From Macrostomum lignano (taxonomy: Eukaryota): 44,295 nt of DNA. How positions within the stretch are numbered: the first letter of the stretch is position 1; each line of letters begins with the position of its first letter. A model generated the notes under the pieces. It saw only the letters and a program-made list of their open reading frames with translations. It ran no database searches and was not told the DNA's origin. The stretch covers positions 252,105 to 296,399 of the forward strand of contig NIVC01001672.1 in the NCBI GenBank assembly GCA_002269645.1. The letters run 5' to 3'. The position numbers and the translations under genes are program-made. Below are positions 13,201-44,295 of the stretch, piece after piece.

Positions 13201-16200
13201 TCCTCACACCACCGAGTCTGTCACTCCCCACACCACCGAGTCTCACTCCCCACACCACCGAGTCTGTCACTCCCCACACCACCGAGTCTCACTCCCCACA
13301 CCACCGAGTCTGTCACTCCCCACACCACCGAGTCTGTCACTCCCCACACCACCGAGTCTCACTCCCCACACCACCGAGTCTGTCACTCCCCACACCACCG
13401 AGTCTCACTCCCCACACCACCGAGTCTGTCACTCATCACCACAGTGTCTGTCACTCATCACCACAGTGTGTGTCACTCCCCACACCACCCAGTCCGTCAC
13501 TCATCACCAGTGTCTGTAACTCCCCCTGCCGCCCGCAGCCGCTGGACTTCGATCCGCAGACCGGCGAATTCGTCGGGGCCCGCGCGGCCCGCCAGCAGTA
13601 CGAGCGCAGCCTCAGCAACAGCTCGGCGCCGAAGCCCAAAGCCCCCGTGGCCCTGGAGATGGGCGAGGGCGGCGTCTACGAGAACCAGCCGCAGAAGCTG
13701 CTGCCTGACGTGGTGCAGTACCAGGCTGGCGGCGGCGGCGAGCTTGGCGACATCCGCGGCACCGCCAGCGCCGCCAAGCGGCAGCTGCTGCTCCGACAGC
13801 GCGAGGCGGAGGAGGCCGCCAGAGCCGGCCGGCCTGGAATGGTGAATTTTGCTGCTGCTGCTGCTGCTGCTGCCGCTGTGTGTGTGCTGCTGCTGGCTGT
13901 TGCACTGCAGCTGCGGCACATTGCCTGACCCTCCTCTCTGCGTGCGCACCGCAGCTGGCTGGCGGCAGGTATTGGCGCAGTTCTGTCTGTGTGCTGTGTC
14001 TGTGTGTGTCTGTGTGCTGTGTCTGTGTGCTGTGTCTGTGTGCTGTGTCTGTGTGTGTCTGTGTGCTGTGTCTGTGTGCTGTGTCTGTGTGTGTCTGTGT
14101 GCTGTGTCGGTGTGTGTCTGTGTGCTGTGTCTGTGTGTGTCTGTGTGCTGTGTCGGTGTGCTGTGTCTGTGTGTGTCTGTGTGCTGTGTCTGTGTGTGTG
14201 TGTCTGTGTGCTGTGTCGGTGTGCTGTGTCTGTGTGTGTCTGTGTGCTGTGTCGGTGTGCTGTGTCTGTGTGCTGTGTCTGTGTGTGTCTGTGTGCTGTG
14301 TCGGTGTGCTGTGTCTGTGTGTGTCTGTGTGCTGTGTCTGTGTGTGTCTGTGTGCTGTGTCGGTGTGCTGTGTCTGTGTGTGTCTGTGTGCTGTGTCTGT
14401 GTGTGTCTGTGTGCTGTGTCGGTGTGCTGTGTCTGTGTGCTGTGTCTGTGTGCTGTGTCTGTGTGTCTGTGTGCTGTGTCTGTGTGCTGTTTTTTGTGTG
14501 CTGTGTCTGTGTGCTGTGTCTGTGTGTGTCTGTGTGCTGTGTCTGTGTGTTGTGTCTGTGTGTGTCTGTGTGCTGTGTCTGTGTGTTTCTGTGTGCTGTG
14601 TCTGTGTGTGTCTGTGTGCTGTGTCTGTGTGTGTCGGTGTGCTGTGTCTGTGTGTGTCTGTGTGCTGTGTCTGTGTGTGTCTGTGTGCTGTGTCTGTGTG
14701 CTGTGTCTGTCTGTTTGTTGTGTATGTCTGCTGTGTGCTAACATAACATAACTAATGTGTCAGTTTGTTGTCTGTGATCTAATTGTTCAGTTAGGGGAAT
14801 GTCTGCTGTGTCTGTCTGCTGTGTCTGTCTGCTGTGTCTGCTGTGTCTGTCTGTTTGTTCTGCCTACATGCATTACTTTTGTCACCTGTGCGCTCTGCTA
14901 TAGTTGACCCAATTTCACTCAATGCATTTTTCTTTTTTGTCTTTTAATGTCGCGCACTTTAAAGCTCACAGAAATCTTTGCTCGCAGCTTCTCACGCAGC
15001 TCCGCCCCCTCCAACCGCCTCTCTCATCGCACTGCTCGGACCCGCCCTGCAGATTGACATCTGGGCCGAGCTCTCAGAGCACAGTGGCGTCTTCGAGAAC
15101 GATCCGCAGCAGCGGCCCGCTGACCTCATCTGGAGCGGCCGCTCCGATGATTGATGATGAAGCTTACATTTACTTCGGGAGTCTGGAACTTGAGGGGAGC
15201 AAAGCTTTGCCGCACGGCTCAGCACCGCTGTAGTTTAGCTGGGAGCTCTGCCAGGGGCGTAGCTGGCGTCGGGAGTTTACTCGGCCTCCGGTAGCAACCC
15301 AAGCCCCCACAACACCCCAACCTCCACAACACCCCAACCACCACAACATCCCAACCTCCAGCGGCACCCCAATTCCCACAACACCCCAGCCCCCACAACA
15401 CCCCAGCCCCACAACACCCCAGCCCCCACAACACCCCAGCCCCACAACACCCCAGCCCCCACAACACCCCAGCCCCACAACACCCCAGCCCCCACAACAC
15501 CCCAGCCCCCACAACACCCCAACCCCAAGCAGCACACAACCCCCACAATACCCTAATTCAAGCAGCACCCCAACCCCCACAACACCCCAAACCACACAAC
15601 ACCCCAACCCCAAGCAGCACCCCACCCCAAGCAGCACACAACCCCCACAATACCCTAATTCAAGCAGCACCCCAACCCCCACAACACCCCAAACCACACA
15701 ACACCCCAACCCCAAGCAGCACCCCACCCCAAGCAGCACCTCAGCCCCCACAACACCCCAACCCCTAGCAGCACCAAATTTCTCTATTTCAAACGATAGC
15801 TACGCCCTTGAATTCCGAGCAACTACCATAAGTAGGGAAAAAATTCTTATCAGTGCTTTTGACAAATCCAGTGACTTCTGCCTGCTATATCCGAGTACCA
15901 ATGCTTAGTGTACATTGGGAGCCTTAATGCAACTGTTAAGAGTATGCTATAAAAGTACTTGTCGGTTCCCTCGCGGCTGTTCACCTCACACATTACAATA
16001 ATTTTCATGCTGGCTTGCCTTGCGTGTTTGTAGCCAGATTCGATTCACCATATACTACTGCTGCTTAACGGTTTGCAGTTCCGTGCATGCAGGTATTTAT
16101 TTGCTTGCGGTATCATTCTGTGTGGAATTCTTTTTGTGTAAGCTAAATTTGTTAATTGCTTTTAATTTGAGCACACTTGTCCGTATTTAGAAGTCCTTGA

Positions 16201-19991: not shown

Positions 19992-22202
19992 TCAGTCTCC
20001 GAGCTGCTGCCGGCCCTGCACTGCAGCGAGAGCGGCAGCGGCCAGCAGCAGCAGCGACTCGGACAGTCCACAGGCCACAGGCGCGACTCCGCTGGCCTGA
20101 TCGGACTGGAACCCGACCGGGATTTCGTTGGCCTGCAGGCTGTTGCACAGCTGGCCCACGCAGATCAGGCAGCCCGACACGAACTGCAGAGTCCGGCAGT
20201 CAAATTTGCCGCAGCCTGCCATCAGGCTGACTTTGTTAGGGGTGTCCTGCGGGGCTCAGGAGGATTGGGGGTGTCCTGCGGGGCTCAGGAGGATTGGGGG
20301 TGTCCTGCGGGGCTCAGGAGGATTGGGGGTGTCCTGCGGGGCTCAGGAGGATTGGGGTGTCCTGCGGGGCTCAGGAGAATTGGCGGGTGTCCTGCGGGGC
20401 TCAGGAGGATTTGGGATGTCCTGCGGGGTTCAGGAGGATTTGGGATGTCCTGCGGGGCTCAGGAGGATTTGGGATGTCCTGCGGGGTTCAGGAGGATTTG
20501 GGATGTCCTCCGGGGTTCAGGAGGATTTGGGATGTCCTGCGGGGCTCAGGATTTGGGATGTCCTGCGGGGCTCAGGAGGATTTGGGATGTCCTGCGGGGT
20601 TCAGGAGGATTTGGGAATGTCCCTTTTAGAGTTCCGAAGTTTCAAGAATGGCTGGGCCGTGCCTCACAGAGTAGCCAGTCGCGAAGTTGGGATCCGGTTC
20701 GGTGAGCTCAATTCGATGGCAGCTGTTGATGCCGGCACCGCAGTAGGCGGGCTCCTCCTTCACCTGCGGCACGTACTCCTTCTTGTCGCCATAGAAGATC
20801 TGCCTGACATCTCCGCTGTAGCTGTAGCACTGGCTGTGCTTCTGCTCGACTCGCTTCAACAAGCCCGTGTTGCACCTGTCTGCACCGCTGCAGACCAGGC
20901 AGTTCGACGGGTCCTGCTTGCACTCGTCGCCTTTGGCGCAGTGCGCTTCGTAAACCTGCGGCAGAGGTTAATCAGTCATCAGTTTGCACGGGGTGGGCGC
21001 GCATGGATAAATACTCTCATGCACGCACAGCTCAGACAGGGTGTACAGCGGTCCTGACTTTCTCGTTGCCAGGTATGTACACTCTCTGTGTCTCTGGGGC
21101 TGGCTCCAGGTATGTACACTCTCTGTGTCTCTGGGGCTGGCTTTTATGAGCCAGAACTGCACGAGTCATGAATTCGTCAGCTAGATTTTGTTCTAAACTA
21201 GCCAGGGACCGGAGGGTAAAAAGAGGCAGGGACTGGAGGGTCAGAGAGGCAGGGACTGGAGGGTAAAAAGAGGCAGGGACTGGAGGGTCAGAGAGGCAGG
21301 GACTGGAGGGTAAAAAGAGGCAGGGACTGGAGGGTCAGAGAGGCAGGGACTGGAGGGTAAAAAGAGGCAGGGACTGGAGGGTCAGAGAGGCAGGGACTGG
21401 AGGGTAAAAAGAGGCAGGGACTGGAGGGTAAAAAGAGGCAGGGACTGGAGGGTAAAAAGAGGCAGGGACTGGATGGTAAAAAGAGACAGGGACTGGAGGG
21501 TCAGAGAGGCAGGGACTGAAGGGTAAAAAGAGGCAGGGACTGGAGGGTAAAAAGAGGCAGGGACTGGATGGTAAAAAGAGACAGGGACTGGAGGGTCAGA
21601 GAGGCAGGGACTGGAGGGTAAAAAGAGGCAGCGACTGGAGGGTAAAAAGAGGCAGGGACTGGAGGGTCAGAGAGGCAGGGACTGGAGGGTAAAAAGAGGC
21701 AGGGACTGGAGGGTCAGAGAGGCAGGGACTGGAGGGTAAAAAGAGGCAGGGACTGGAGGGTAAAAAGAGGCAGGGACTGGAGGGTCAGCGAGGCAGGGAC
21801 TGGAGGGTCAGAGAGGCAGGGACTGGAGGGTCAGAGAGGCAGGGACTGGAGGGTCAGAGAGGTAGGGACTGAAGGGTCAGAGAGGCAGGTGTCCCGCACA
21901 GGCGAAGTCGCAGTACAGCCTCACGAGAGTCCTCTCATCGCTGGCCAGCTGGATTCTCTCGAAGCAGCCGGTGTGGAAGGAGGCGCAGGGCTCCGAGTAG
22001 TTTTGCTGGCTGAAGTCCACGGCAACCAGGCATTCCAAGGACGCTGCTCTGTCTGCAGTTTCGCCAGGTTCAACGAGTACGAGCTACCATGAGTGGTTCG
22101 ACGAACCTGGAATATTAGAATCGAATCGAGCTGATAAGGGAGAAACTTACGAATGGCTGCAGAAAGGATGATCAAACATGCGATAAGCTGATTGAGCTGC
22201 AT
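19992..22202 (-). CDS. Secreted, probably GPI-anchored Ly6/uPAR (three-finger) protein with two LU domains, 240 aa
   Basis: Exons (minus) 22202-22151, 22052-21925, 20955-20668 and 20246-19992 total 723 nt in frame. Signal peptide MQLNQLIACLIILSAAIHRAAS. LU1 is LEC...PC...GC...HC...EC...NCLVCSGADRCN. LU2 is QCY...YC...SC...GC...DC...GCLICVGQLCN. A Ser/Gly linker and a hydrophobic tail (LLLLAAAALAAV) follow. The 22052 acceptor has a weak pyrimidine tract. Confidence 0.82.
20240..20620. repeat. ~29-30-bp minisatellite (ggggctcaggaggattgggggtgtcctgc) in LU-gene intron 3
   Basis: Tandem units; the last unit overlaps the splice acceptor. Confidence 0.95.
21020..21105 (-). mobile_element. Short degenerate fragment of the same SINE family
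   Basis: gcacgcac...cagggtgtacagcgg...aggtatgtacact aligns to 37322-37400. Similar short fragments lie at ~32628-32680 (-) and ~38224-38245 (+). Confidence 0.55.
21205..21890. repeat. 24-bp purine-rich minisatellite (gaggcagggactggagggt[aaaaa/cagag]) in LU-gene intron 2
   Basis: About 28 units of two alternating variants. Confidence 0.95.
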
Positions 22203-22389
22203 CGTTGAGTTCACCACACCGTTCAGCTTCCAATCGAATTGTTTATTTCGAGTTTAGAGCGCTCTTATTAAAATGCCGTGTGCAGCTACTCAAACGGTCT
22301 GCTCTGTGTTGGCTGTCTACATTTTTCTGCGCCGCGTACGAAATGTCTATGGGTCAGGCCTAGCTGGTTAGTTAGTAAACCTATTTGGT

Positions 22390-22745
22390 TACCGGATGAG
22401 GCTGACCTCTGGTTACCGGATGAGGCTGACCTCTGGTTACCGGATGAGGCTGACCTCTGTTACTGGGTGAGGCTGACCTCTGGTTACTGGATGAGGCTGA
22501 CCTCTGGTTACTGGGTGAGGCTGACCTCTGGTTACCGGATGAGGCTGACCTCTGGTTACTGGGTGAGGCTGACCTCTGCTTACTGGATGAGGCTGACCTC
22601 TGGTTACTGGATGAGGCTGACCTCTGGTTACTGGATGAGGCTGACCTCTGGTTACTGGATGAGGCTGACCTCTGGTTACTGGATGAGGCTGACCTCTGGT
22701 TACTGGATGAGGCTGACCTCTGGTTACTGGATGAAGCTGACCTCC
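22390..22745. repeat. 24-bp minisatellite (ggatgaggctgacctctggttact)
   Basis: About 14 units, upstream of the LU-gene start. Confidence 0.95.
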
Positions 22746-23104
22746 CCTTGCTGGGGGTATGTCCACCAATTAGCATCTTACATTTTCTACGAAGTACATT
22801 ACAAACTGCATGTGTTTGTAGGATGGCGGCAAGGCCCTCAAAATTCCCTCGAAAGGCCCTCGAATGAGATTTGGACTGGCAACTTCTGTCAACACTGCAG
22901 AGTAGCCTAGCGGCTCCCCGCAAATACACGAATTCAAGGTACATCCTGATATTTATTGAACCACTCATATGTAAATTAGCAAGCCCTTTCTGTTGCAGGT
23001 GTGTCAATTCAAACACCTACAATGTATGAGCGCCTACAGAAAAGAGATAATAAATTTCCCCATGAAAAAGTCATCGCTAGATCATCTACATTTACTGCTG
23101 ATAG

Positions 23105-24151: not shown

Positions 24152-27100
24152 ATGAGCGCAGCAGCTCAGACGCCGAGCGGCAACGCTGTCGTTGCCGACT
24201 CCTCACGCAGCGACAGGAATCTGCGCCAGTTCGTGGCCAGCTTCCTGGACTACACCACCGCGCACGGACTCGGTCGCTTCGCTCACCAGTCCAGCCTGCT
24301 CGGCAGGATGATCTGGCTGGCCTTCCTGCTCGGCACCTACAGCGGCTTCGTCTACCACCTGTACACCCTGTTCGGCAGGTTCCTCACCGCCCCGGTGCTC
24401 ACCACCATGACAATGTCCACGCTGTCGTACGAGTTCCCGGATGTGTACATCTGTCCCGCACAAGCCGTCACACTGAGCAGGGCCATTGAGCAGATGCCGA
24501 TAGGCCTAATCAACTGGAGAGAGAATGACAGGACAGTCCAGATCGATTTCAAGATACACTTCTATGAGTTCGACTTGGAGTCTGGGAACTACGCTGCGCA
24601 GAACAAGCCGGCGCAAGCTCTGATGAATGTGCTGCAGAGTGCCGAGAGCTCGCTCATGGCCGAGCTGCAGTTCCCCAAGAGCAGTGAGTTCCTAATATAT
24701 CTGCATCTACAAGTTCATCTTTCTCAGTATTTTATGAGTAGTTCAGTGATTCCCACTGTGCAACGAACTTCTCAGGCAGAGTGGAGTGCAGGACCACGCT
24801 CTCCGGTGAGGATTACTCGGGCAACGCCAGTGTTGCGGTTGTCTACGATCGGACGAAGATGCGAGTCACGGCTTCGAACATTTCTGGCGTGCTGCCGCCA
24901 TTCAGGACGTACAGGCAGTGCATGCAATGGAACGATGCGGCTCAGAGGCTGAGAAGTGTGAACACCAGTTTAACACACAGCCTCGCTGACCGACTGCTGG
25001 CGTTGAACTTCTCCGACAGCGAGTCTCGCTGTCGCTCCCCGCCAGGGCTCCCGCTGTCCGATTTTTTCCCCATCGCGAATCGTGAGTCAAGAGATTGTTT
25101 TGCAAGCTTTATTCGGCTTTATTCGACATTCCAACCGAACCTGGAATTACAGGCCCCACGCTGCGGCTTGTTGGTTGCTTTGAGGCGAACTTCACCGACC
25201 ATGAATTCAACTACACCTGCGACACGGAAGGCATTGTGACTCACGAGACCTGCGCTCACTGTTGCGCTTCGCTCGACTTCAGCCACATCGCGCTGCAAGT
25301 TGACAGCTGCCTGTGCGGAGCGAGTTCCCCAAGCTCCGGCAATGACAGCGGCGTCTGCAGCAGTCGCTGCGCCAGCAACGATCAGCAGCACTGCGGGTCA
25401 GCAACCGCCATCACGGTGCTGCAGCTCGGAGACACAGGTGAGTCTCTTGAATTCTTGTCAGCAGAAGCCTCTATAACTCTAGCCGAGGCTCAATCCGCTT
25501 GCAGAGCCGAGGCCGCTGCAGGTGGGAAACTTCAGCAACCTCACAGTCTTCTCGCACGGGCCCTACTGCTTCTTCACTGATGAGCGAGACAGGCTGGGCG
25601 CTGCGTTCTGCGATGTGCCCTTCTGCCGTGAGTGAGTTTGCCATACCGAGGATTATCTCCTCGGTTACACCGCACGAATGCTACACTTTTTCAGCGATGT
25701 CAGGTGCTTACGACTGCATCGTGAGCTCTGAGAACAAGACCCTTGAGCGGCTGACACGGGCCCGGTACACCGGTAGGAAAAACTACACAATCACCGGGAA
25801 GCCGTGCGTGCCGTGGAGTAAGCTGGAGAAGATACAAGAGGATACGTACATAAGAATGGGTAACTATGCGACCGCTGCATGCACAGAATGCGATAAAATG
25901 CCCGAGTTCGAATTCATATCCATGACTTGCAAACGCCGACTACTCATAGGTTACCACAAGCAGTTCGGATTTCACGTTCAGACTCCGGACTTCAATCCCA
26001 ACAGCAGCGACAATTTCTGCCGATCGGCGCAGATCGTTATCGACCACGGCTCGTACTTTAGTACGCACGAGGCTTAGTAAGAAAATCTTCCTATCGAATT
26101 CTTTCTTTGACTTCTGCTGCATAAAACTTTAAATATGTTTAACTCAGCCTCTGCTTCAATTTATAAAAACATAACTTCAGTCGCTTCGCACAAGAAATGT
26201 CTGATGTGCCGGGCTGCATCCCGGACATCATGGGCTGGGGCGGTCTCTTTGATGCTGACTTTGAGCCCTGCGAGATCCCGCTGTGTTGTAAGTCGCTTTT
26301 TCAGGGCCTTTAGAGCCCTTTGTTGAACAACCGATTGATAGGAAGTTCTCATTCAAAATATCTTTCCTGATCCCGCATTCACATAACATTTAACAGATGC
26401 CGCGGTCCCCAGCGTGACGGGCGCCGTCAGAGACTCAGTCGGCAGCCACCTGCTGGCCCGACAGTTCGGCAGCGACCTCAACGCCGGCCTCGCCGACTGC
26501 AGCTTCGCTGGCCAGAAGTGCACCAAGGACGACTTTGTGAACGTCGCCCACCCGCAGCTGGGCATGTGCCACAAGTTTCTCAAGCAGCGCTTCACCGCCA
26601 ACATGACCAGCACGCAGTTGGCGGAGAGCCAGCTGTCCATCAAGTACTTCACGGACTCGACAGACTCCAAGGGTCAGACGGTGTCCAACATCGACAAGCT
26701 GACGCGGGTAGTGCGAGACAGCCGCGGCTCCGATGCGACTCAGGTCGCATTCAAGGTGAGTCTTCGTCGGTCGCTGAGCGTCTCAATGTCTCACGCAATC
26801 TCTGAGCCTGGCTGCTCAACCGCGAACCCGCAGGCGGTCATCGTTCCGGATAGCTCGTTCCCGTGGGCCTCGAAGGGAATCGATGTGGCCACCGCTCAGC
26901 GCATGGATGTGCAGCTGAGGTTCGACAAGTACTCCAGACTGTCAACTACGTCAAGGCCCTGCCTTGAGACTACGGAGCCGATCACCTACCGACTGCCGTC
27001 ATGGAAGTCGGCTCCATTTAATGAGAACCCGGAGTGAGTCTTCATGCAGAAATATTTTATCGCCGTGAAGACTGCGCACTGACTGATCAATGATTCCCTT

Positions 27101-28278
27101 TACAGCTACAGTTTCGACTTAAATGCGGTTGCCATGGTGACTGATTGGTGGCTGAAAGTTGCCGCAATGGAAGTGCAGCTTCGAAAGCAGAAGCAAGGTG
27201 CATTGAGGTATGGACCATAGGCTTTAGCTTGTGCGAGTGTGACTGCCAGGTTTGCAAAAGTTCCACGCATTTCCCAAATTTGCAGTTCGCTGTCGGAATT
27301 CGACTCAGAATTCAAGCTGACTGACCGAGACGACTGCATCAACAGACACGTTGTGAAGAAGTTCATCGCGGAATGCCACTGCCTGCCGTCGTTCCTGCCG
27401 ATTCCGGTGGAGTACTTTTCGAATTACACCTACTGTTTTGATTTTCAAGCCGCTGGAAACGTGTCCATAGAAACGGACATGTGCTACAGAGAGCAGAAGT
27501 CGAAGGTGCTGGAGTACCAGTTTGCTGCAGTCCGGCTGTGCCAGTCTCCCTGCCGTACAGCCGAGTACAGCGTCCGCCACATCACCTATCCGTGGCCGAA
27601 CCTGAACGGTCTGCAGTCGTTCTCGTTTCTGAAAACCCTGGCCACCGCGTTTGGATACGGCAGCAACCCCAGCGGCCTGAGGGGCCTGAACAGCATCTAC
27701 AGCATCTACCTGAGATCCCTGAGGGATTCGGCCATTCCTGTCAGCAATCGGAGCGCGACAGAAATCCTGAGCTTTCAAAACGAGCTGACGGTGCTGCAGA
27801 ACCGACTGGCTCAGCTGACGGTTCAGGCCTGGACGTCATTCGGCCAGGAGATCTTGGAGGAGGAGGCCTACCCGGCCAAGAACCTCGTGGCCGACATTGG
27901 AGGTGACAATGAGCAGGTTCTGTACTCAGTGACCCTGGATCCCAAGTCTCTCAGGAATTTCAGCTTTCGCATCTCATGCCTAAAATTGCAGGTGCCTTGG
28001 GTCTTTGGTCGGGAATTTCCATTCTGACAGTTTGCGAGCTGCTCGAGCTGTTTATCTACATCGGCCTGGCCATCGGCTACAAATTCCACAGAGTCGCTGC
28101 GCCCCGCAACCGGAACAACGGCGGCCCTGGCGCCAACAACAACTTCAACAACAATTGCACCAATACCGGCAGTGTCCCAACCGTGGCCTCATCTGTTGCT
28201 GGGTGCTCGGAGATGATACAGTCGGCTGTGAGTCAGGACTCTGTCCAGGTTGAGTTGGAGTCCAATTCCAGAATGTAA
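24152..28278 (+). CDS. DEG/ENaC/ASIC-family (amiloride-sensitive type) channel subunit with kringle-WSC-kringle insert, 1069 aa
   Basis: Exons 24152-24683, 24776-25081, 25153-25437, 25505-25627, 25695-25859, 25950-26076, 26181-26287, 26397-26755, 26834-27033, 27106-27207, 27286-27902 and 27992-28278 total 3210 nt with no internal stop. Family motifs: TTAHG, TM1 (IWLAFLLGTYSGFVYHLY), FPDVYICP, CSFAGQKC..DF...GMCHKF, Cys-rich thumb (C...CHCLP...YC...C...CQSPC) and EEEAYP..NLVADIGGALGLWSGISILTVCELLE (TM2 with GxS filter). Confidence 0.93.
24776..25627 (+). other. Kringle-like domain 1 of the channel, interrupted by the WSC exon
   Basis: The N-half in exon 2 has ECRTTLSGEDYSGNAS...RQCMQWN...SRCRSPPG. 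The C-half in exon 4 has GPYCFFTD...AFCDVPFC. Together these give the six kringle Cys with the C-x-x-W, CRxP, PxC and CxVPxC landmarks. Confidence 0.75.
25153..25437 (+). other. WSC domain encoded by a single phase 1-1 exon
   Basis: LVGCFE...THETCAHCCASLDFSHIALQVDSCLCG...VCSSRCASNDQQHCGSATAITV matches the WSC pattern GC...T.E.C...C......L....C.CG...C...C......CG....V. Confidence 0.82.
25695..26287 (+). other. Kringle-like domain 2 of the channel
   Basis: YDCIV...RYTGRKNYTITGKPCVPWSKL...DNFCRS...VPGCIP...PCEIPLC fits the kringle consensus YRG..xTxSGxxCxxW / NYCRNP / PWC / CxIPxC, with expanded loops. Confidence 0.8.
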
Positions 28279-28836
28279 CGAGAAGTCGTGAATGTGGTTT
28301 GAGAATTGATGCCGGAAACTAGAAGTACAGGTGCCTGGTAATTTGTAAGGTCTCCGTAACCAGCCGATGAATATCTATTGACATCTGTTGGCCTTGCTGT
28401 GCTTGGAATTCCTATCTACTAAAGATTTATATAAGCAAAGTTTAAAGAATACAAGTATGTTTCACTCGCTTCATTTTAAATCTTTAATGACAAACCTAAC
28501 GATGTACGAGTATGTTTGGTAAGACATTTTGATGTTAGTTCTCTTCATCTGTTTGTCAGATCAGAAATAGTTTTCACAGAAACCTTTTTCCTTTGCTTAC
28601 TTGTTTTTTTCTTTTTTCCTTTCCTCTTACAAAACTTGACCTTTAAATTCTTATCGTCACTCCTGAATAAATTCGTTTTATTTAGACGTGCCTGTAGAGA
28701 CTTTTCGATCGATGGCTGCACTTTCTCGGCATCTAACTCGGAGAAGCGTCGAACTTTTTAACCCTGAAAAAGTTACTGAAACTTAATCGTGAATACCAAG
28801 ACAGACTTTATTACGCAATAAAACAGCTGCTAGTTG

Positions 28837-28883
28837 ACAGACAGACAGACAGACAGACAGACGCTAAGACAGACAGACGCCAT

Positions 28884-28930
<47 letters not shown>

Positions 28931-28951
28931 GCTAAGACAGACAGACGCCAT

Positions 28952-29002
<51 letters not shown>

Positions 29003-29022
29003 TGACTGACAGACAGACAGAC
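28837..29022. repeat. (GACA)n microsatellite
   Basis: Read directly. Confidence 0.97.
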
Positions 29023-29367
29023 AGATTTCGAGCGTATTTGATTTATCATTCATTCAGTCTGAAACAGCCAGACCAGATCATTTGCGCCAATGGCTCGTGG
29101 CGAGGGAGAAAGACCAGACCGCCAAGACGATTGCCTTCGATGGCGTGTCCCCCTTTAGTGACACCAAACCCGAGCGTGATGTACCGCTGTCCTGTCGTTG
29201 TCTGCACCCCGGTCATGCTGTACTCCAACTGGAGCTTTGGCACCTTCGAGAGCGCCAAAATCATAAACGAGGATGAAGATATGCATTAGTGGCGGAGCCC
29301 ATTAAATGGAGTTCGATGTCAATCCGGAGCTTCCATATAGCAGCGCCGCTGCAATAGCAGTCGCGTG

Positions 29368-31282: not shown

Positions 31283-31500
31283 GGGTTGTAGCCTAGTGGT
31301 CAGAGCGTCGGACTCACGACTTGAAGGTCGGGGGTTCGATTCTCAACCCACTCGGAACAATTTTGTGTCCTTGAGCAAGACACTCAACTATGCATTGATT
31401 CAGTTCACCCAGCTGTAAAATGGGCACCAGCATTAGCTGGGGTAATTGAGGCTGTGTGTGGCGACCCAGTCCTTGGACTGAACAGCCGTACGCAGCCTTC
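31283..31500 (+). mobile_element. tRNA-derived SINE with CORE-like central domain (3' end uncertain)
   Basis: A box TAGCCTAGTGG (31289-31299) and B box GGTTCGATTCT (31333-31343). These are followed by gtgtccttgagcaagacactcaac...ttcacccagctgtaaaatggg, which resembles the MIR/CORE consensus GTGACCTTGGGCAAGTCACTTAAC...CTGTAAAATGGG. Confidence 0.75.
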
Positions 31501-31647
31501 AGATGCGCCGCTCAATAGCTGCGGCTGAGCTGTCGGTTGCACATCTGGCCAAACTGGGGCAAGGTGTAATCAACTATTGCTTGCTCCCTGTCACTGCGTG
31601 GAGGAGCCAGCAGCAAAATGTCTCCTCTGGCCTGGCGACGCGAAAAA

Positions 31648-32605
31648 ACATGGTAGACATGTTAGACATGGTAGACATGTTAGACATGGTAGACATGGTG
31701 GACATGGTAGACATGTTAGACATGGTAGACATGTTAGACATGGTAGACATGTTAGAACATGGTACACATGTTAGACATGGTAGACATGTTAGACATGGTA
31801 GACATGTTAGACATGGTAGACATGGCAGACATGGTACACATGTTAGACATGGTAGACATGTTAGACATGGTAGACATGGCAGACATGGTACACATGTTAG
31901 ACATGGTAGACATGTTAGACATGGTAGACATGGTAGACATGGTAGACATGTTAGATATGGTAGACATGGTACACATGTTAGACATGGTAGACATGTTAGA
32001 CATGGTAGACATGTTAGACATGGTAGACATGTTAGACATGGTAGACATGTTAGACATGGTAGACATGTTAGACATGGTAGACATGTTAGACATGGTAGAC
32101 ATGTTAGACATGGTAGACATGTTAGACATGGTAGACATGGTAGACATGGTAGACATGTTAGACATGGTAGACATGGTAGACATGGTAGATATGGTAGACA
32201 TGGTAGACATGGTAGACATGGTAGACATGTTAGACATGGTAGATATGGTAGACATGGTAGACATGTTAGACATGGTAGACATGGCAGACATGGTACACAT
32301 GTTAGACATGGTAGACATGTTAGACATGGTAGACATGGTAGACATGGTAGACATGTTAGATATGGTAGACATGGTACACATGTTAGACATGGTAGACATG
32401 TTAGACATGGTAGACATGTTAGACATGGTAGACATGTTAGACATGGTAGACATGTTAGACATGGTAGACATGTTAGACATGGTAGACATGGTAGACATGG
32501 TAGACATGTTAGACATTTTAGACATGGTAGACATGTTAGACATGGTAGACATTTTTGACATGTTAGACATGGTAGACATTTTTGACATGTTAGACATGGT
32601 AGACA
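31648..32605. repeat. 9-bp minisatellite (tagacatg[g/t])
   Basis: About 105 units; produces the spurious MVDMLD, RHVRHG and MSTMSN ORFs. Confidence 0.97.
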
Positions 32606-33554
32606 TTACAAGCGCGCCAACACTGTACGCAGGCACGCACTCATACACGCTCACACAGGGTGTACAGCGGCTCTGGCTTTCTAATCGTCAGGCTTGTAGT
32701 CTCTGCGCCTTGGTGGTTGGTCCTCATGCGATTGAATCGCACAGAAATCCCCGACAGCCGAATGAATGCCATGGGTCGCAGAGTGAGAGCCGGATGCTCA
32801 ACTCCTCAGCCGATGCTTGATGTGGTTATGATTAACGCGTTAGGACAGCTGGCTACTTAAACAGCATTACGTACTACTATAAAGAGTAGCAACCTGGCAT
32901 GTCGCTCTACTTCTACTAGCATAGTGGTCCTCGTTACCCCAGCATGTTTAAAGCTGCTGATTGCAAACTAGCTCGTAGAACTGTAGTGTGCTCTGCATAT
33001 GAGAAGTACTTTTCCGCACTCGAGCACTTTGGAAGGAAATTTTTTCGAGTCTGCACGATTCATCATCGTCTATTGGGACAGTTGCTGGCGCCAATTATTG
33101 GGCTTAAAAATCGAGCGAAATCGAAACCGCGCGCATTTTGCATAATTTTATAGGCATGCTGTGCGGCTTACTGATTGCTGACGGACACCCGCGAATCCAG
33201 CGAGGAGGCCAGGATCACGCCTCGCTTGTGCACAGAGCATTTGAGACAAGCCCCCGGCACATTTTCGGAATCAAACCCAGGTACTTTGGTGGATGTGTCG
33301 GACTTCATCAGAATCTGATTTTGAATTCTGATTTAAGTTACTTATACTGCCCCCGCCGCGTGCGCAGGCAGCGATGCCATCCAATGTGAAGCCCTGGGAG
33401 ACTGGGAATCCAAGAGGACAGAGCACATCGAACCCATTGAGCAGAGCTGCATGCTCACTGGAAAGCCGGATGTACTTTTTGTTGGTGCTGGTCTGGCCAT
33501 CTGTATGAGCTGCTGCCCAGCCCAGACAGAGACGCGAAAGTCAGCAGCGGGACT

Positions 33555-40859: not shown

Positions 40860-43800
40860 TTACTGCGTCCGTATCGAGCGCGACCATCTCTGACTCCGGC
40901 CTGGCCGACTCTTCGGGCTGACCGTCGGCGTTTTTTGACTGCATCCGGGCTGCGCCTGCACTCTGGCAGCCAGCGCCTGTCCCAGGTAGATGAAGAGCTC
41001 CAGCAGCTCGCAGATAGTTAGGATTGAGATGCCGGACCAGAGACCCAGAGCTCCTGAAATTCATTTTGTATTAACGGTTTTTCAATACTGAAAGACTTGT
41101 GAGCATGATCAACCTGGACCACTTACCCCCGATGTCGGCCACCAGGTTCTTGGCTGGGTAGGCCTCCTCCTCTGAGACTTCGTGGCGCGGGACTGCCAGG
41201 CCTGGACCGTCAGCTGAGACAGGCGGTTCTGCACGCCGCCAGCTCGCTTTCGAAGCTCTGAATTGCCTCGGTGCTCCGGTTGATGACGGAGTGTCAGAGA
41301 GGTTCTGAGCCTTAAGGTAAAGGTAGTAGATGCTTGAGGCGCCTCTCATCAAGCTGATATCGTGTCGATAGCCAAAGTCGGCGGCCAACTTCTTCAGAAA
41401 GTCGAGAGACTGCACCGAGAGCAAGTTCGGCCACGGGTAGGTGATGTAGCGGGTGCTGAAGTCGGTCTTGCTGCAGGGCGACTTGCATTCGTTCATGGCT
41501 TCAAAATGGTACTGCGTGATCTTCGACACCTGCTCAATGTAGCACTTCTCAGTGTTGGCCGAAATGTTTCCCCTTGAGTACATGTCGAAGCAGTAGCTGA
41601 GCTTTTTGAACCGCTCTTCTTGAATGGGAAGCATCCCCGGCAGGCATCGGCAGGTGTTGGTGAATTTTTCGACAACATAAGTGTTGACGCAGTTCTCTCT
41701 GTCCGAGACTTTGAACTGACTACCCGAGACTGTCAGTGCGCTGAAGTCATGGAATTAAAATTATTGCAAAATTCGATTTGACATGCTGAAATTCCCAGAA
41801 GCAGAGAAGCGCGAAAAAGGAGGGTTTTATGCAAAATCTTACCTTGAGCCGTTCAGTTTAAGCAGCGCGTTGCGCAACATAGACAGCTTCAGCGTCCAGT
41901 TGGAAGATCGCATAATTTCCTGCGCATCCGAGTTGACGCTGGAAGCAAATTTTTAGTTTTAAACAGCTTTGATATTTACAATATTGCAGACTAAAGATAA
42001 GGAAATAAAACTTTTTGCTTTCTTTACCCAGAGTCCTCATTTGACGTAAACAGCTTCCATGACGGCAGTCGGTAGGTGATCGGCTCCGTAGTCTCAAGGC
42101 AAGGCCTCGATGAGGTGGACAGTCTGGAGTACTTGTCGAATCTAAGATGCACGTCCATGCGCTGAGCGGTGGCCACATTGACGCCGTTCGAGGCCCACGG
42201 GAACGAGCTATCCGGGACGATGACCGCCTGCGGGTTCGCGGTTGAGCAGCCAGGCTCAGAGATTGCGTGAGACACTGAGACGCCCAGCGACCGATGAAGA
42301 CTCACCTTGAATGCGACCTGAGTCGCATCGGAGCCGCGGCTGTCTCGCACCACCCGCGTCAGCTTGTCGATGTTGGACACCGTCTGACCCTTGGAGTCTG
42401 TCGAGTCCGTGAAGTACTTGATGGACAGCTGGCTCTCCGCCAACTGCGTGCTGGTCATGTTGGCGGTGAAGCGCTGCTTGAGAAACTTGTGGCACATGCC
42501 CAGCTGCGGTGGGCGACGTTCAAAAGTCGTCCTTGGTGCACTTCTGGCCAGCGAAGCTGCACTCGGTGAGGCCGGCGTTGAGGTCGCTGCCGAACTGTCG
42601 GGCCAGCAGGTGCTCACCGACGGAGTCTCTGATTGTGGCTGTCACGCTGGGGACCTCGGTGTCTAAAGAAATTCATTCGTACAGAATGCACTGAAAACAA
42701 TGCCTAGAATATAATAATAAATAATAACGAGAAACAGATCCAGCTCAATTGTCACTGGCGCAACTCACAACAGAGTGGCACATTACAGGTCTGAAAGATC
42801 ATGTTAAACAGGTAGCCAAATTTTATCGTAATGGACGGAATGTTGCCCAGAAATCTTCCGGAATGCACACAGGAACCTCCGAATCGATGGCGCTAAACCG
42901 CCTAAAATAATAGGAAAGATTTTGGAGCGCTGCAACAAGCACACATACGCTACTTGCGATGCAATACGAAGCTTACTGGAAGTCCTTGGGCCCGTGGATG
43001 TTGACAGAATCGACCACAACGCTAACCGGACGGCAGTAATTGTCGCTCTCGCCTTCAAGCCTGTCCGGAGTCTGGATAAGCATTTCCCGCACTTCGTCCA
43101 TGAAGCCAACTTCCGAACCTAAATTGAATTTGACTGGTTCGATCAGGCGAAATTAAATTTGCCAGCGGCACAGGTGAGCAATGCAATCGAAGCTCTTACC
43201 GCGGCGCGCCTTGAGAACTTGCTCAATTGTGGACAGCTGACTCCAGGGCATGCACCGCCGGCCAGTGCTGGTGACGTTCCGACGTCCGGTGTAGCGCGAC
43301 AGCCTTTGCTGCTGAGTCAGCTTGTCCTCGGAGCTCACGATGCAGTCGTAGTTCTCGAAATTTCTGGATTGAGCGATGGAACGTCAAGTATTTCATTCAC
43401 GAATCGAAGTCGTCTTGAAAGGAAAAGTCAGGCAACATGTTGGAAACTCACGGCAGTAGGGAATTTCGCAGAATGCAGCGTTCAGCTTGTCGCTCAGCTC
43501 ATCCGCGAAAAAGCAGTAGGGCCCGCTGGAGATTGCGTCCAGGTCGCTGAAGTTTGCGACGTGCAACGGCCTGCTGCCTACAAAGTGGAATGCGTGCCTT
43601 GAGCTGCGAGTTACGAGTCTGCAGAATGACCTGATTTTGCCAGCAATATACAAGTGACCATAAAAATCTGTCCCAGTCGTCAACTTATCGGTTTTATTGA
43701 GCTACTTTTGAGTAGCAACCAATCTCTAACCCGCTCTCCGACTATCCCACCTACCGTTGTCCCGAATCTGCAGAACAGTGACGGCAGTTTCCGATCCACA

Positions 43801-44295
43801 GATTGCCGAATTGTCGTGGAGGCAGGAGGCGTTGCACACGCTGCTGCTGTTCTCGTAGCCGCCAATGCTGCTCCCGCAGAAGCAGTCCTGGCGGCTGATC
43901 GCCATGTACTGGAAGCTGCGCCTGCCGCAGCATTCAGCGCAGGTTCGAGCGAGCTCAAGCCGCCCCGGTAGCAGGTGAAGTTGAACGAACTCGAGTTGGT
44001 CAGCGCAAGGGGAAGGCAGCCGGCGTGCCGAAACACCGAGCCTGTGGTGTTGGCAGGACCGGAAATCTCCATCCGTGTGACCTGATCGAGACAAACAAAT
44101 CGGACAAACAGATGGAAACTCACGGCTAGCGATAGGAAAGAACTCAGACAGAGGCAGCCCAGGCGGCGAGCGGCACCGGGACTCGCTGTCTGAAAAGTTC
44201 AGCGCCAGCAGTCTGTTAGCCAGGCCACTTTCGCCGAGGCTCAGCAGTTTTTGAGCTGCATCGTCCACCTCATGCACTGCTTGACGCCTCTGTAC
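40860..44295 (-). CDS. Second DEG/ENaC subunit with the same kringle-WSC-kringle insert; 5' part lies beyond the window; frameshifted as assembled (sequence errors or pseudogene)
   Basis: Exons (minus) >44295-44124, 44041-43755, 43577-43452, 43363-43200, 43118-42977, 42901-42769, 42662-42306, 42227-42028, 41938-41843, 41740-41127 and 41053-40860, at the same intron positions and phases as the 24152-28278 gene. Motifs: SRCRSPPG, WSC (HAGC...RTCAECC...CFCG...CNASC...ICGS), GPYCFF...CEIPYC, RYTGRRNVTSTGRRCMPW, DNYCRP, NLVADIGGALGLWSGISILTICELLE. At least 9 one-base deletions must be corrected. Confidence 0.85.

What the first reader, a model, noticed from the sequence alone, without database searches (positions are those of the whole stretch)
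24776..25627. WSC domain nested inside kringle 1 by a symmetric phase 1-1 exon
Seen: kringle Cys1-3 (ECRTT, QCMQW, SRCRSP) lie in exon 2 and Cys4-6 (GPYCFF, FCDVPFC) lie in exon 4. The entire WSC domain is exon 3 (285 nt, phase 1-1), sitting in the loop between CRxP and PxC. Removing exon 3 restores a contiguous in-frame kringle. The paralog has the same nesting. In Kremen the domains are tandem, not nested. Inference: exon-shuffling insertion into a kringle loop, which also allows a WSC-less isoform by exon skipping.
Basis: partly seen in the sequence, partly recalled or inferred. Interest (0 to 1): 0.8.

Follow-up and report, generated by a model that had tools for sequence, protein, structure and literature searches.

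The report
WSC domain nested inside a kringle
In a flatworm (Macrostomum lignano) sodium-channel gene, one self-contained exon places a WSC domain in a loop of a very divergent kringle domain, a clear and previously undescribed example of one protein module being spliced into another by exon shuffling.

Summary
Exon 2 (24776-25081) carries kringle Cys1-3, exon 3 (25153-25437, 285 nt, phase 1-1) carries a complete WSC domain, and exon 4 (25505-25627) carries kringle Cys4-6. All introns are GT-AG.

WSC passes Pfam's threshold on exon 3 alone. The kringle is highly divergent:
- Pfam finds nothing in the exon-3-deleted gene A sequence.
- A family profile of exon 2+4 matches real kringles over their full length (hhalign 96.6%, E 6.6e-10; shuffles reach at most 19 against 57).
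- Each half matches its own end of the kringle.
- MAFFT splits 46 real kringles around the WSC.

These exons belong to a 12-exon, 1069-aa DEG/ENaC channel gene of Macrostomum lignano. Exons 2-7 (kringle1[WSC] plus kringle2, 1113 nt, phase 1-1) sit in the finger region of the ectodomain.

Five paralogous loci keep the same one-exon, phase 1-1 WSC. In 1.84 billion representative proteins, only this M. lignano family matched the whole cassette among the 150 best hits.

Exon-shuffling insertion is the best explanation, but it is inferred. A WSC-less isoform is frame-compatible and untested. The databases list these proteins only as "WSC domain-containing". I rate it a new variant of a known kind, of moderate interest.

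The parts
24152..24683 (+). Gene A exon 1: start codon, cytoplasmic N-terminus with the HG motif (TTAHGLGRF), TM1, post-TM1 FPDVYIC motif and the start of the ectodomain. It ends in phase 1.
   Evidence: ORF and splice sites. Pfam ASC hit on the whole protein. Alignment to FaNaC1 residues 4-84.
24776..25081 (+). Exon 2 (306 nt, phase 1-1): N-terminal two thirds of the divergent kringle 1, with Cys1 (ECR), G-x-x-Y-x-G, Cys2 (QCMQW) and Cys3 (SRCRSP), plus the conserved linker PPGLPLSDFFPIAN.
   Evidence: hhalign to kringle columns 1-30 when tested alone and within the full-length match. Near-invariant columns C4 G10 Y13 G15 C48 W51 C85 R86 in the alignment with 46 kringles.
25082..25152 (+). 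Intron 2 (71 nt, GT-AG, phase 1), upstream boundary of the WSC exon.
25153..25437 (+). Exon 3 (285 nt, phase 1-1): the complete WSC domain, with 10 Cys including the 8 canonical ones.
   Evidence: Pfam PF01822 33.1 bits against a cut-off of 27.8. The canonical Cys columns are shared with 68-70 of 70 WSC repeats. Foldseek on the model hits yeast Wsc1 (E 1.1e-4, prob 1.00) and Kremen1.
25438..25504 (+). Intron 3 (67 nt, GT-AG, phase 1), downstream boundary of the WSC exon.
25505..25627 (+). Exon 4 (123 nt, phase 1-1): linker plus the C-terminal third of kringle 1, with Cys4 (GPYCFF) and Cys5-6 (FCDVPFC).
   Evidence: hhalign to kringle columns 62-85 when tested alone. phmmer hits to the C-terminal ends of HGF, plasminogen and ROR1 kringles. 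Near-invariant columns P216 C218 C232 C237.
25695..26287 (+). Exons 5-7 (25695-25859, 25950-26076, 26181-26287; 399 nt together, phase 1-1 as a block): divergent kringle 2 with 6 Cys and a long Cys3-Cys4 loop that holds a phase-2 intron.
   Evidence: Gene model. hhalign against kringles 97.4%, E 1.2e-11. Pfam Kringle is the only family hit in 6 of 6 paralogs, below threshold, best E 2.5e-4. 9 of 12 PDB phmmer hits are kringles.
26397..28278 (+). Exons 8-12 (26397-26755, 26834-27033, 27106-27207, 27286-27902, 27992-28278): the rest of the DEG/ENaC ectodomain, TM2 with the G-I-S filter motif, the C-terminus and the stop codon.
   Evidence: Pfam ASC E 3.8e-39. FaNaC, ASIC and PPK structures hit. 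Hydrophobic peak at residues 978-1004.
40861..44295 (-). Paralog gene B, truncated by the window end and convergent with gene A. It has the same nesting: kringle N-half exon up to 44124, WSC exon 44041-43755 (287 nt here, 288 in the public assembly) and kringle C-half exon 43577-43452 (126 nt).
   Evidence: tblastn, sequence, frame map against P0002, and the intact ortholog locus L004.

Best explanation
**What it is**
- The region is exons 2-4 of a Macrostomum lignano DEG/ENaC (amiloride-sensitive sodium channel family) subunit gene.
- The ectodomain carries a lineage-specific cassette of about 370 residues in its finger region. The cassette is a very divergent kringle (K1) followed by a second divergent kringle (K2).
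- A complete WSC domain sits inside K1, in the loop between Cys3 (CRSP) and Cys4 (GPYC).

**Shown**
- The WSC domain is encoded by a single 3n exon bounded by phase-1 introns.
- The two kringle halves lie in the neighbouring exons.
- The arrangement is conserved in at least five paralogous loci.

**Inferred**
- A class 1-1 WSC module was inserted by intronic recombination (exon shuffling) into a phase-1 intron that already split the kringle between Cys3 and Cys4. This happened before the family expanded.
- The fold tolerates the insert for two reasons:
  - The site is a surface loop.
  - The first and last strands of the WSC sheet are neighbours (beta1-beta5-beta3-beta4-beta2), so the domain's entry and exit points lie close together.
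- The three canonical kringle disulfides (1-6, 2-4, 3-5) each pair an exon 2 Cys with an exon 4 Cys. The halves therefore have to reassemble around the WSC. That would give a rigid kringle-WSC unit like the tightly packed KR-WSC pair of Kremen.

**Speculative**
- This unit, projecting from the finger domain, binds an extracellular glycan, matrix component or protein ligand, and so tethers or modulates the channel.
For: **Exon coordinates and phases**

**WSC identity**
- Pfam WSC is above threshold on exon 3 alone.
- The 8 canonical WSC Cys are kept.

**Kringle homology of exon 2+4**
- hhalign gives 96.6%, E 6.6e-10 over all 85 kringle columns, with the six Cys aligned.
- 100 column shuffles score at most 19.3 against 56.7, and the reversed alignment scores 8.8.
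- The halves match kringle columns 1-30 and 62-85 separately (P 3.4e-6 and 1.5e-6). Controls against WSC are null.
- Kringle is the only Pfam family hit, weakly, by 2 of 5 K1 sequences and 6 of 6 K2 sequences.
- PDB phmmer hits are kringles.
- In the exhaustive HMMER search, multi-kringle proteins match profile positions about 206-280, that is K1 C-half plus K2 N-half.
- MAFFT splits 46 kringles around the insert.

**Structure model**
- With that alignment the AlphaFold2 model is confident (mean pLDDT 82.4, pTM 0.72; the blocks covering K1N residues 41-100 are 86-97, and K1C residues 211-237 are 86-93).
- Its best PDB matches are Wsc1 and the Kremen1 ectodomain.

**Conservation**
- The WSC exons are 285, 288, 276, 312 and 300 nt, all phase 1-1. 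The C-half exons are 123-126 nt. This holds in gene A and loci L004, L002, L001 and L003.
- Independent NCBI gene models (P0002, P0005, P0008, P0012) use the same junctions.
- All six kringle Cys are invariant in all the family sequences aligned.

**Channel context**
- Pfam ASC E 3.8e-39, and hits to FaNaC, ASIC and PPK structures.
- The insert lies between the equivalents of FaNaC1 residues 84 and 168.
- The cassette is 1113 nt, phase 1-1.

**Published background**
- WSC strand order and the tight KR-WSC packing in Kremen1: PMC5014086.
- Class 1-1 modules as the hallmark of exon shuffling: PMC8001218.
Against: - Pfam's Kringle HMM does not detect gene A's exon 2+4 at E<=1, and it never reaches the gathering score in any paralog.
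- Foldseek found no significant kringle match to the model. The best were the ROR1 kringle at E 1.4 and the neurotrypsin kringle at E 4.6.
- The confident model used an alignment seeded with real kringles, so it shows compatibility rather than independent proof.
- With family sequences only, the model was useless (pLDDT 40.7).
- K1 is far from canonical. The Cys1-Cys2 and Cys3-Cys4 spacings are greatly expanded, and two predicted helices lie between Cys2 and Cys3.
- No relative with an uninterrupted K1 was found, so the direction of the event is inferred.
- No transcript evidence was available for this locus.
- The family was found in one species only.
- No functional data exist.
Confidence: 0.8

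Rival explanations
1. Half-kringle complementation after exon loss. The ancestor was tandem kringle-WSC-kringle(-kringle). The exon for the C-terminal half of the first kringle and the exon for the N-terminal half of the second were then lost. That would leave an N-half and a C-half of different origin flanking the WSC.
For: Kringles here are split by introns in the same Cys3-Cys4 loop; K2 has a phase-2 intron there. Tandem WSC-kringle and kringle-WSC proteins exist, for example P0022 (WSC repeats followed by a kringle) and Kremen. No uninterrupted-K1 relative was found that would fix the direction of the event.
Against: It needs two in-frame deletions instead of one insertion. The two orphan halves would have to be mutually compatible at once, because all three disulfides cross between them. 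The exon 2 / exon 4 pair behaves as one kringle in profile alignment, covering columns 1-85 without overlap or loss.
Confidence: 0.1
2. Not a kringle at all. Exons 2 and 4 encode unrelated cysteine-rich linker segments whose resemblance to kringle motifs is convergent or due to chance. The architecture would then be simply linker-WSC-linker-kringle-like.
For: No Pfam Kringle hit on gene A's exon 2+4. No significant Foldseek kringle hit. The profile of exon 2+4 against PDB gives only E 0.76. Spacing is strongly non-canonical and helices are predicted.
Against: The hhalign full-length match is far above the shuffled and reversed controls. Both halves independently match the correct kringle end. 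The diagnostic non-Cys residues are also kept (G-x-x-Y-x-G, C-x-x-W, C-R-x-P, G-P-[YW]-C, C-[DEN]-[IV]-P-x-C). Every weak database hit is a kringle.
Confidence: 0.07
3. Gene-model artefact. Exon 3 is not part of the mature mRNA, or is only a minor form, so the main protein has a contiguous kringle and the nesting exists only on paper.
For: No RNA data were available. The exon can be skipped in frame. Automated models of this family are error-prone: P0001 reads through intron 2, and P0006, P0007 and P0011 lack the C-half.
Against: The exon has consensus splice sites. It is an intact ORF with all 8 WSC Cys in every intact paralog examined, despite 31-54% protein identity over this segment, which implies purifying selection. 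The NCBI models of four paralogs include it.
Confidence: 0.03

Closest known systems
Kremen1/2 ectodomain (KR-WSC-CUB)
   Same: It combines a kringle and a WSC domain in one extracellular unit. In Kremen1 the two pack tightly and together form the Dkk-binding face (PMC5014086). Kremen1 structures are among the best Foldseek matches to the model (E 3.6e-4 to 1.8e-3, 214-237 aligned columns).
   Different: In Kremen the domains are tandem and each is contiguous. Here the WSC lies inside the kringle chain between Cys3 and Cys4. There is no CUB domain. The host protein is a two-TM DEG/ENaC channel, not a type I receptor. The global superposition is poor (rmsd about 17 A).
Canonical kringle domains (plasminogen, HGF, ROR, multi-kringle invertebrate proteins such as P0009)
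   Same: Six Cys and the signature residues align over the full 85-column kringle profile.
   Different: The sequence is below Pfam's threshold. Cys1-Cys2 is about 44 residues (about 22 in the kringles aligned here). Cys3-Cys4 is 133 residues, or 38 without the WSC (about 9-13 in the kringles aligned here). Helices are predicted between Cys2 and Cys3.
WSC domains (yeast Wsc1 mechanosensor, Kremen, polycystin-1, fungal multi-WSC proteins)
   Same: Pfam WSC is above threshold, the 8 canonical Cys are present, and the model matches the Wsc1 structure 7PZ2 (TM 0.65 normalised by the target, prob 1.00).
   Different: It has two extra Cys. It is used as an insert within another module rather than as a terminal or tandem repeat.
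DEG/ENaC channels with extra extracellular modules or finger-domain inserts (from my own knowledge, not tested here: the C. elegans EGAS proteins carry EGF domains, and ENaC finger inhibitory tracts)
   Same: The variable finger region of the ectodomain is the place where lineage-specific additions sit. Gene A has the HG motif, FPxxxxC, the GxS filter and two TMs.
   Different: I found no report of kringle or WSC modules in a DEG/ENaC channel in the paper searches.
Nested extracellular modules made by insertion (from my own knowledge, not tested here: the laminin L4 domain inside an LE module, and the integrin beta I-like domain inside the hybrid domain inside PSI)
   Same: A disulfide-rich host module is split by a whole guest domain and closes around it.
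   Different: The host and guest types differ. Here the guest corresponds exactly to one class 1-1 exon, so the genomic trace of the insertion is still visible.

Membership tests
Kringle (PF00051) | Six conserved Cys in the order and context C1 ... C2-x-x-W ... C3-R-x-P ... P-W/Y-C4 ... C5-x-[IV]-P-x-C6 | tested here: met
   All six Cys and their flanking signature residues align with 5 and with 46 bona fide kringles. They are invariant in the family sequences aligned.
Kringle (PF00051) | Significant match to the curated family model (Pfam gathering score 34.3 bits) | tested here: not met
   Gene A exon 2+4 has no hit at E<=1. The best paralog reaches E 0.049. K2 reaches 17.4 bits in the whole protein (16.2 alone), with best family E 2.5e-4. 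Profile-profile comparison is significant: 96.6%, E 6.6e-10.
Kringle (PF00051) | Contiguous domain of about 80 residues | tested here: not met
   K1 spans 237 residues with the WSC and 142 without it. It has family-specific insertions.
Kringle (PF00051) | Disulfide connectivity 1-6, 2-4, 3-5 and the kringle fold | tested here: inconclusive
   The AlphaFold2 model is confident (pLDDT 82.4, pTM 0.72).
WSC (PF01822) | Match above Pfam's gathering score | tested here: met
   33.1 bits against 27.8 on exon 3 alone and 30.4 on exons 2-4. It is 26.3, just below threshold, in the full-length protein.
WSC (PF01822) | Eight conserved Cys and the beta-sheet plus one helix (PAN-like) fold | tested here: met
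   The Cys columns are shared with 68-70 of 70 WSC repeats. Foldseek hits Wsc1 7PZ2 at E 1.1e-4, prob 1.00, and Kremen1 at E 3.6e-4. The fold description is from PMC5014086.
DEG/ENaC (PF00858, ASC) | Family HMM match, two TM segments, HG motif, post-TM1 FPxxxxC and G/S-x-S in TM2 | tested here: met
   ASC E 3.8e-39. TTAHGLG, FPDVYIC and WSGISILT are visible in the sequence. There is a hydrophobic peak at residues 978-1004. Hits to FaNaC1, ASIC5 and PPK26 structures.
Kremen | Tandem KR-WSC-CUB ectodomain on a single-pass receptor | tested here: not met
   No CUB hit. The WSC is nested rather than tandem. The host is a two-TM channel.
Class 1-1 exon-shuffled module | Domain boundaries coincide with exon boundaries, both flanking introns are in phase 1, and the length is 3n | tested here: met
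   Exon 3 is 285 nt, phase 1-1, and contains the whole Pfam WSC match. The same holds in four other loci. The criterion is taken from PMC8001218.

The most novel reading that the evidence does not exclude
This is a two-level nest made by exon shuffling: a WSC exon inside a kringle, and the kringle-WSC-kringle cassette (itself a 1113-nt phase 1-1 block) inside the finger domain of a DEG/ENaC channel. On this reading it creates a Kremen-like kringle-WSC binding head, and this head couples an extracellular glycan, matrix or protein ligand to channel gating. That would define a new, flatworm-specific class of tethered or ligand-modulated DEG/ENaC channels. WSC is the sensor domain of the yeast wall-stress mechanosensor Wsc1.
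Probability: 0.25. Interest if true: 0.75.

Novelty: new variant of a known kind. Interest (0 to 1): 0.55.

Why it matters
- **Module insertion caught in the gene structure.** Exon shuffling is usually documented as beads on a string. Here one class 1-1 module has been dropped into the middle of another small disulfide-locked module. The host appears to have kept all six cysteines in every paralog, and the exon structure still records the event.
- **Limits of domain detection.** It shows how far a kringle can be stretched and still be recognisable. It also shows that standard domain annotation (Pfam or UniProt: "WSC domain-containing protein") misses such split, divergent hosts.
- **Ion-channel biology.** It reveals an expanded M. 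lignano DEG/ENaC subfamily whose finger domain carries binding-type modules. This gives a testable lead on how these orphan channels are gated or anchored.

Tried and rejected
1. **Word-indexed protein searches.** Searches with the 371-aa cassette and with the exon-3-deleted kringle returned nothing. These are false negatives of the prefilter, because the full-length query and the exhaustive search found family members containing these segments. I draw no conclusion from them.
2. **Folding the exon-3-deleted construct.** Structure prediction refuses artificial sequences, so it could not be run.
3. **AlphaFold2 with family sequences only.** Five family sequences gave pLDDT 40.7 and meaningless Foldseek hits.
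4. **Mixed alignment.** Combining WSC repeats and kringles in one MAFFT alignment misplaced the kringles onto the WSC region. Only family plus kringles was used.
5. **An apparent upstream duplicate.** A second kringle-like exon set seemed to lie in locus L001. It was an artefact of two loci being stored in one file; the hits belonged to L002.
6. **Profile of exon 2+4 against PDB sequences.** Only a plasminogen kringle appeared, at E 0.76.
7. **Literature searches.** Searches for kringle or WSC in DEG/ENaC channels, and for Macrostomum ENaC, found no description of this architecture.
Full report
**Observation.** I read 24300-26200, then translated and spliced the candidate exons.
- Exon 2 is 24776-25081 (306 nt), exon 3 is 25153-25437 (285 nt) and exon 4 is 25505-25627 (123 nt).
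- All three have canonical AG acceptors and GTGAGT donors. Each enters and leaves in phase 1.
  - exon 2: ECRTT, QCMQW, SRCRSP
  - exon 4: GPYCFF, FCDVPFC
- Exon 2 has 3 Cys, exon 4 has 3 and exon 3 has 10.
- Joining 25081 to 25505 keeps the frame, with junction codon CAG.

**The gene.** The exons are not a free-standing kringle protein.
- The ORF starting at 24152 encodes the N-terminus of a DEG/ENaC channel, with the HG motif, TM1 and FPDVYIC.
- Following GT-AG sites and frame gives a 12-exon, 1069-residue model ending at 28278. It has a typical TM2 (GALGLWSGISILTVCELLELF).
- Pfam scores the protein as ASC (PF00858) at E 3.8e-39, plus WSC and a weak kringle.
- phmmer against PDB sequences hits FaNaC1, ASIC5, ASIC1/2 and PPK26.
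- In the FaNaC1 alignment, query residues 24-104 match FaNaC 4-84, and query 578-609 match FaNaC 168-200 only weakly (score -3.0). On that placement the extra roughly 370 residues sit in the finger region of the ectodomain.
- Exons 2-7 total 1113 nt and are flanked by phase-1 introns. The whole kringle1[WSC]-kringle2 block is therefore itself a symmetric 1-1 cassette.
- The cassette carries 12 N-x-S/T sequons, which fits an extracellular location.

**Organism and family.**
- The full-length query found Macrostomum lignano proteins:
  - P0001, 92% identical, UniProt "WSC domain-containing protein"
  - P0002, 56% identical, NCBI BOX15_Mlig006056g1, which corresponds to the paralog at the window's end
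  - several more family members
- I ran an exhaustive HMMER search with a family profile of the cassette against 1.84 billion representatives.
  - Among the 150 best hits listed, only this family matched the whole profile: P0001, P0005, P0008, P0012, plus P0004 to profile position 343 and fragments.
  - The rest were multi-WSC proteins matching positions about 100-187, or multi-kringle proteins matching about 206-280.
- The three further clusters I checked (P0012, P0015, P0035) are all M. lignano.
- Precomputed annotations list only WSC and ASC. No source annotates a kringle.

**Is exon 3 a WSC domain?** Yes.
- PF01822 scores 33.1 bits against a cut-off of 27.8 on exon 3 alone, covering profile positions 2-81 of 82.
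- The eight canonical Cys align with those of 68-70 of 70 diverse WSC repeats.
- The model's top PDB matches are the Wsc1 sensor domain (E 1.1e-4, prob 1.00) and Kremen1.

**Do exons 2 and 4 make one kringle?** With single-sequence tools the signal is weak.
- Pfam finds nothing in gene A's exon-3-deleted sequence.
- Two of five paralogs give weak Kringle hits, best E 0.049, and nothing else.
- phmmer against PDB gives sub-significant hits. Three of the four are the C-terminal ends of HGF, plasminogen and ROR1 kringles.

With profiles the signal is clear.
- An alignment of five WSC-deleted family sequences (A1) against five Pfam-annotated kringles from P0009 (A2) gives hhalign probability 96.6%, E 6.6e-10 and score 56.7. 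It covers all 85 template columns and aligns all six Cys.
- One hundred column shuffles of A1 average 11.5 with a maximum of 19.3. The reversed alignment scores 8.8.
- Tested separately, the exon 2 half matches kringle columns 1-30 (P 3.4e-6) and the exon 4 half matches columns 62-85 (P 1.5e-6). Shuffle maxima are 16 and 18. Comparisons with a WSC profile are null.
- MAFFT, given the family and 46 diverse kringles and no guidance, aligns C1, G-x-x-Y-x-G, C2-x-x-W and C3-R on the exon 2 side. It aligns P-x-C4, C5 and C6 on the exon 4 side, leaving a gap that spans the WSC.
- Kringle 2 behaves similarly: hhalign 97.4%, E 1.2e-11; Pfam Kringle is the only family hit in 6 of 6 paralogs.
- I conclude that exon 2+4 are a kringle-derived module. 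It is far from canonical and below Pfam's threshold.

**Structure.**
- The nested segment with five family sequences gave a useless model (pLDDT 40.7; Foldseek).
- With the family-plus-kringle alignment the model is confident: mean pLDDT 82.4 and pTM 0.72. The 10-residue blocks covering residues 41-100 are 86-97, and residues 211-237 are 86-93.
- Foldseek then returns Wsc1 and Kremen1 (KR+WSC) significantly, but no significant stand-alone kringle. That is expected for a sequential aligner faced with a split, expanded kringle, but it is not positive evidence.
- The structural evidence is decisive for WSC. For the kringle it is only compatible.

**Conservation of the gene structure.** I fetched the loci of P0008, P0005, P0012 and P0002 from the public assembly and located the three segments.
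- In every locus the WSC is one exon with phase-1 introns on both sides and a length of 3n (312, 276, 300 and 288 nt).
- The kringle C-half exon is 123-126 nt.
- These proteins are 31-54% identical to gene A over this segment, so the nesting predates the family's expansion.
- The window's second copy (minus strand) shows the same layout.

**Mechanism.** A domain that coincides with a single exon bounded by introns of the same phase is the accepted signature of exon shuffling, and class 1-1 is the dominant class for extracellular modules (PMC8001218).
- The most economical history is insertion of a 1-1 WSC exon into a phase-1 intron lying in the kringle's Cys3-Cys4 loop.
- The WSC sheet order beta1-beta5-beta3-beta4-beta2 (PMC5014086) puts its first and last strands side by side, which suits a loop insertion.
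- Canonical kringle bridges are 1-6, 2-4 and 3-5 (the same paper gives C32-C114, C55-C95 and C84-C109 for Kremen1). Every bridge would therefore link exon 2 to exon 4.
- The invariance of all six Cys argues that the halves still close on each other.
- This history is inferred. A route by loss of half-kringle exons from a kringle-WSC-kringle ancestor cannot be excluded.
- The WSC-less isoform is frame-compatible and otherwise untested. The exon 3 splice sites are consensus.

**Comparison and novelty.**
- Kremen is the closest known kringle-WSC combination, but it is tandem, has a CUB domain and is a single-pass receptor. This is not a Kremen.
- I found no paper describing kringle or WSC modules in DEG/ENaC channels, or a domain nested in a kringle.
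- Nested extracellular modules are known in general. I therefore rate this a new variant of a known kind, of moderate interest. It is mainly a clean evolutionary example and a lead on an orphan channel family.

Noticed in passing
window 24776-26287 (exons 2-7): The whole kringle1[WSC]-kringle2 block is 1113 nt and is bounded by phase-1 introns. It is itself a symmetric cassette in the finger region of the DEG/ENaC ectodomain (between the equivalents of FaNaC1 residues 84 and 168), which makes this a two-level nest.
   Followed up: partly
window 44295-40861, minus strand (gene B): Compared with the otherwise near-identical public protein P0002, this copy has at least 8 single-base frameshifts. 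They lie near 44263, 43944, 42844, 42523-42509, 41287, 41234-41216, 41187-41184 and 40950-40947. At least two of the three inspected at base level are one-base losses in short homopolymers. That pattern looks more like assembly indel errors than a decayed pseudogene. Gene A has none.
   Followed up: partly
window 26400-27007 vs 42659-42054: A 608-nt tract covering exon 8, intron 8 and most of exon 9 is 94.4% identical between the two convergent paralogs, intron included. The rest of the two genes is 68-81% identical or unalignable. This suggests a recent gene-conversion tract.
   Followed up: partly
window 25860-25949 (intron 5): This 90-nt intron is in frame and stop-free. Retention would add 30 residues with 3 extra Cys to kringle 2. 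The paralogs show no such insert. The public model P0001 uses a slightly different junction (MGYNYHKQ against MGYHKQ).
   Followed up: partly
proteins P0006, P0007, P0011, P0001 (public M. lignano gene models): Several automated models of family members lack or truncate the kringle C-half exon, which would leave Cys1-3 unpaired, or read through intron 2. These are probably annotation errors, but real exon loss or skipping in those paralogs was not excluded.
   Followed up: no
window 26061-26180 and K2 exons: Kringle 2 also has an intron (phase 2, after HEAY) inside its expanded 30-residue Cys3-Cys4 loop, the same loop that hosts the WSC in kringle 1.
   Followed up: no
window about 890-1450, 2600-3400, 5200-6300, 7300-8800, 9600-11400, 11650-14760, 15200-15900, 21650-22910, 28810-29050, 31480-32820: Long tandem and microsatellite-like repeat arrays give long spurious ORFs in several frames and fill much of the window outside the two channel genes.
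   Followed up: no
(tool behaviour): The word-indexed protein search returned no hits for the cassette or for the exon-3-deleted kringle, although database proteins contain these segments at over 90% identity. Negative results from that tool with sub-sequence queries should not be trusted.
   Followed up: yes
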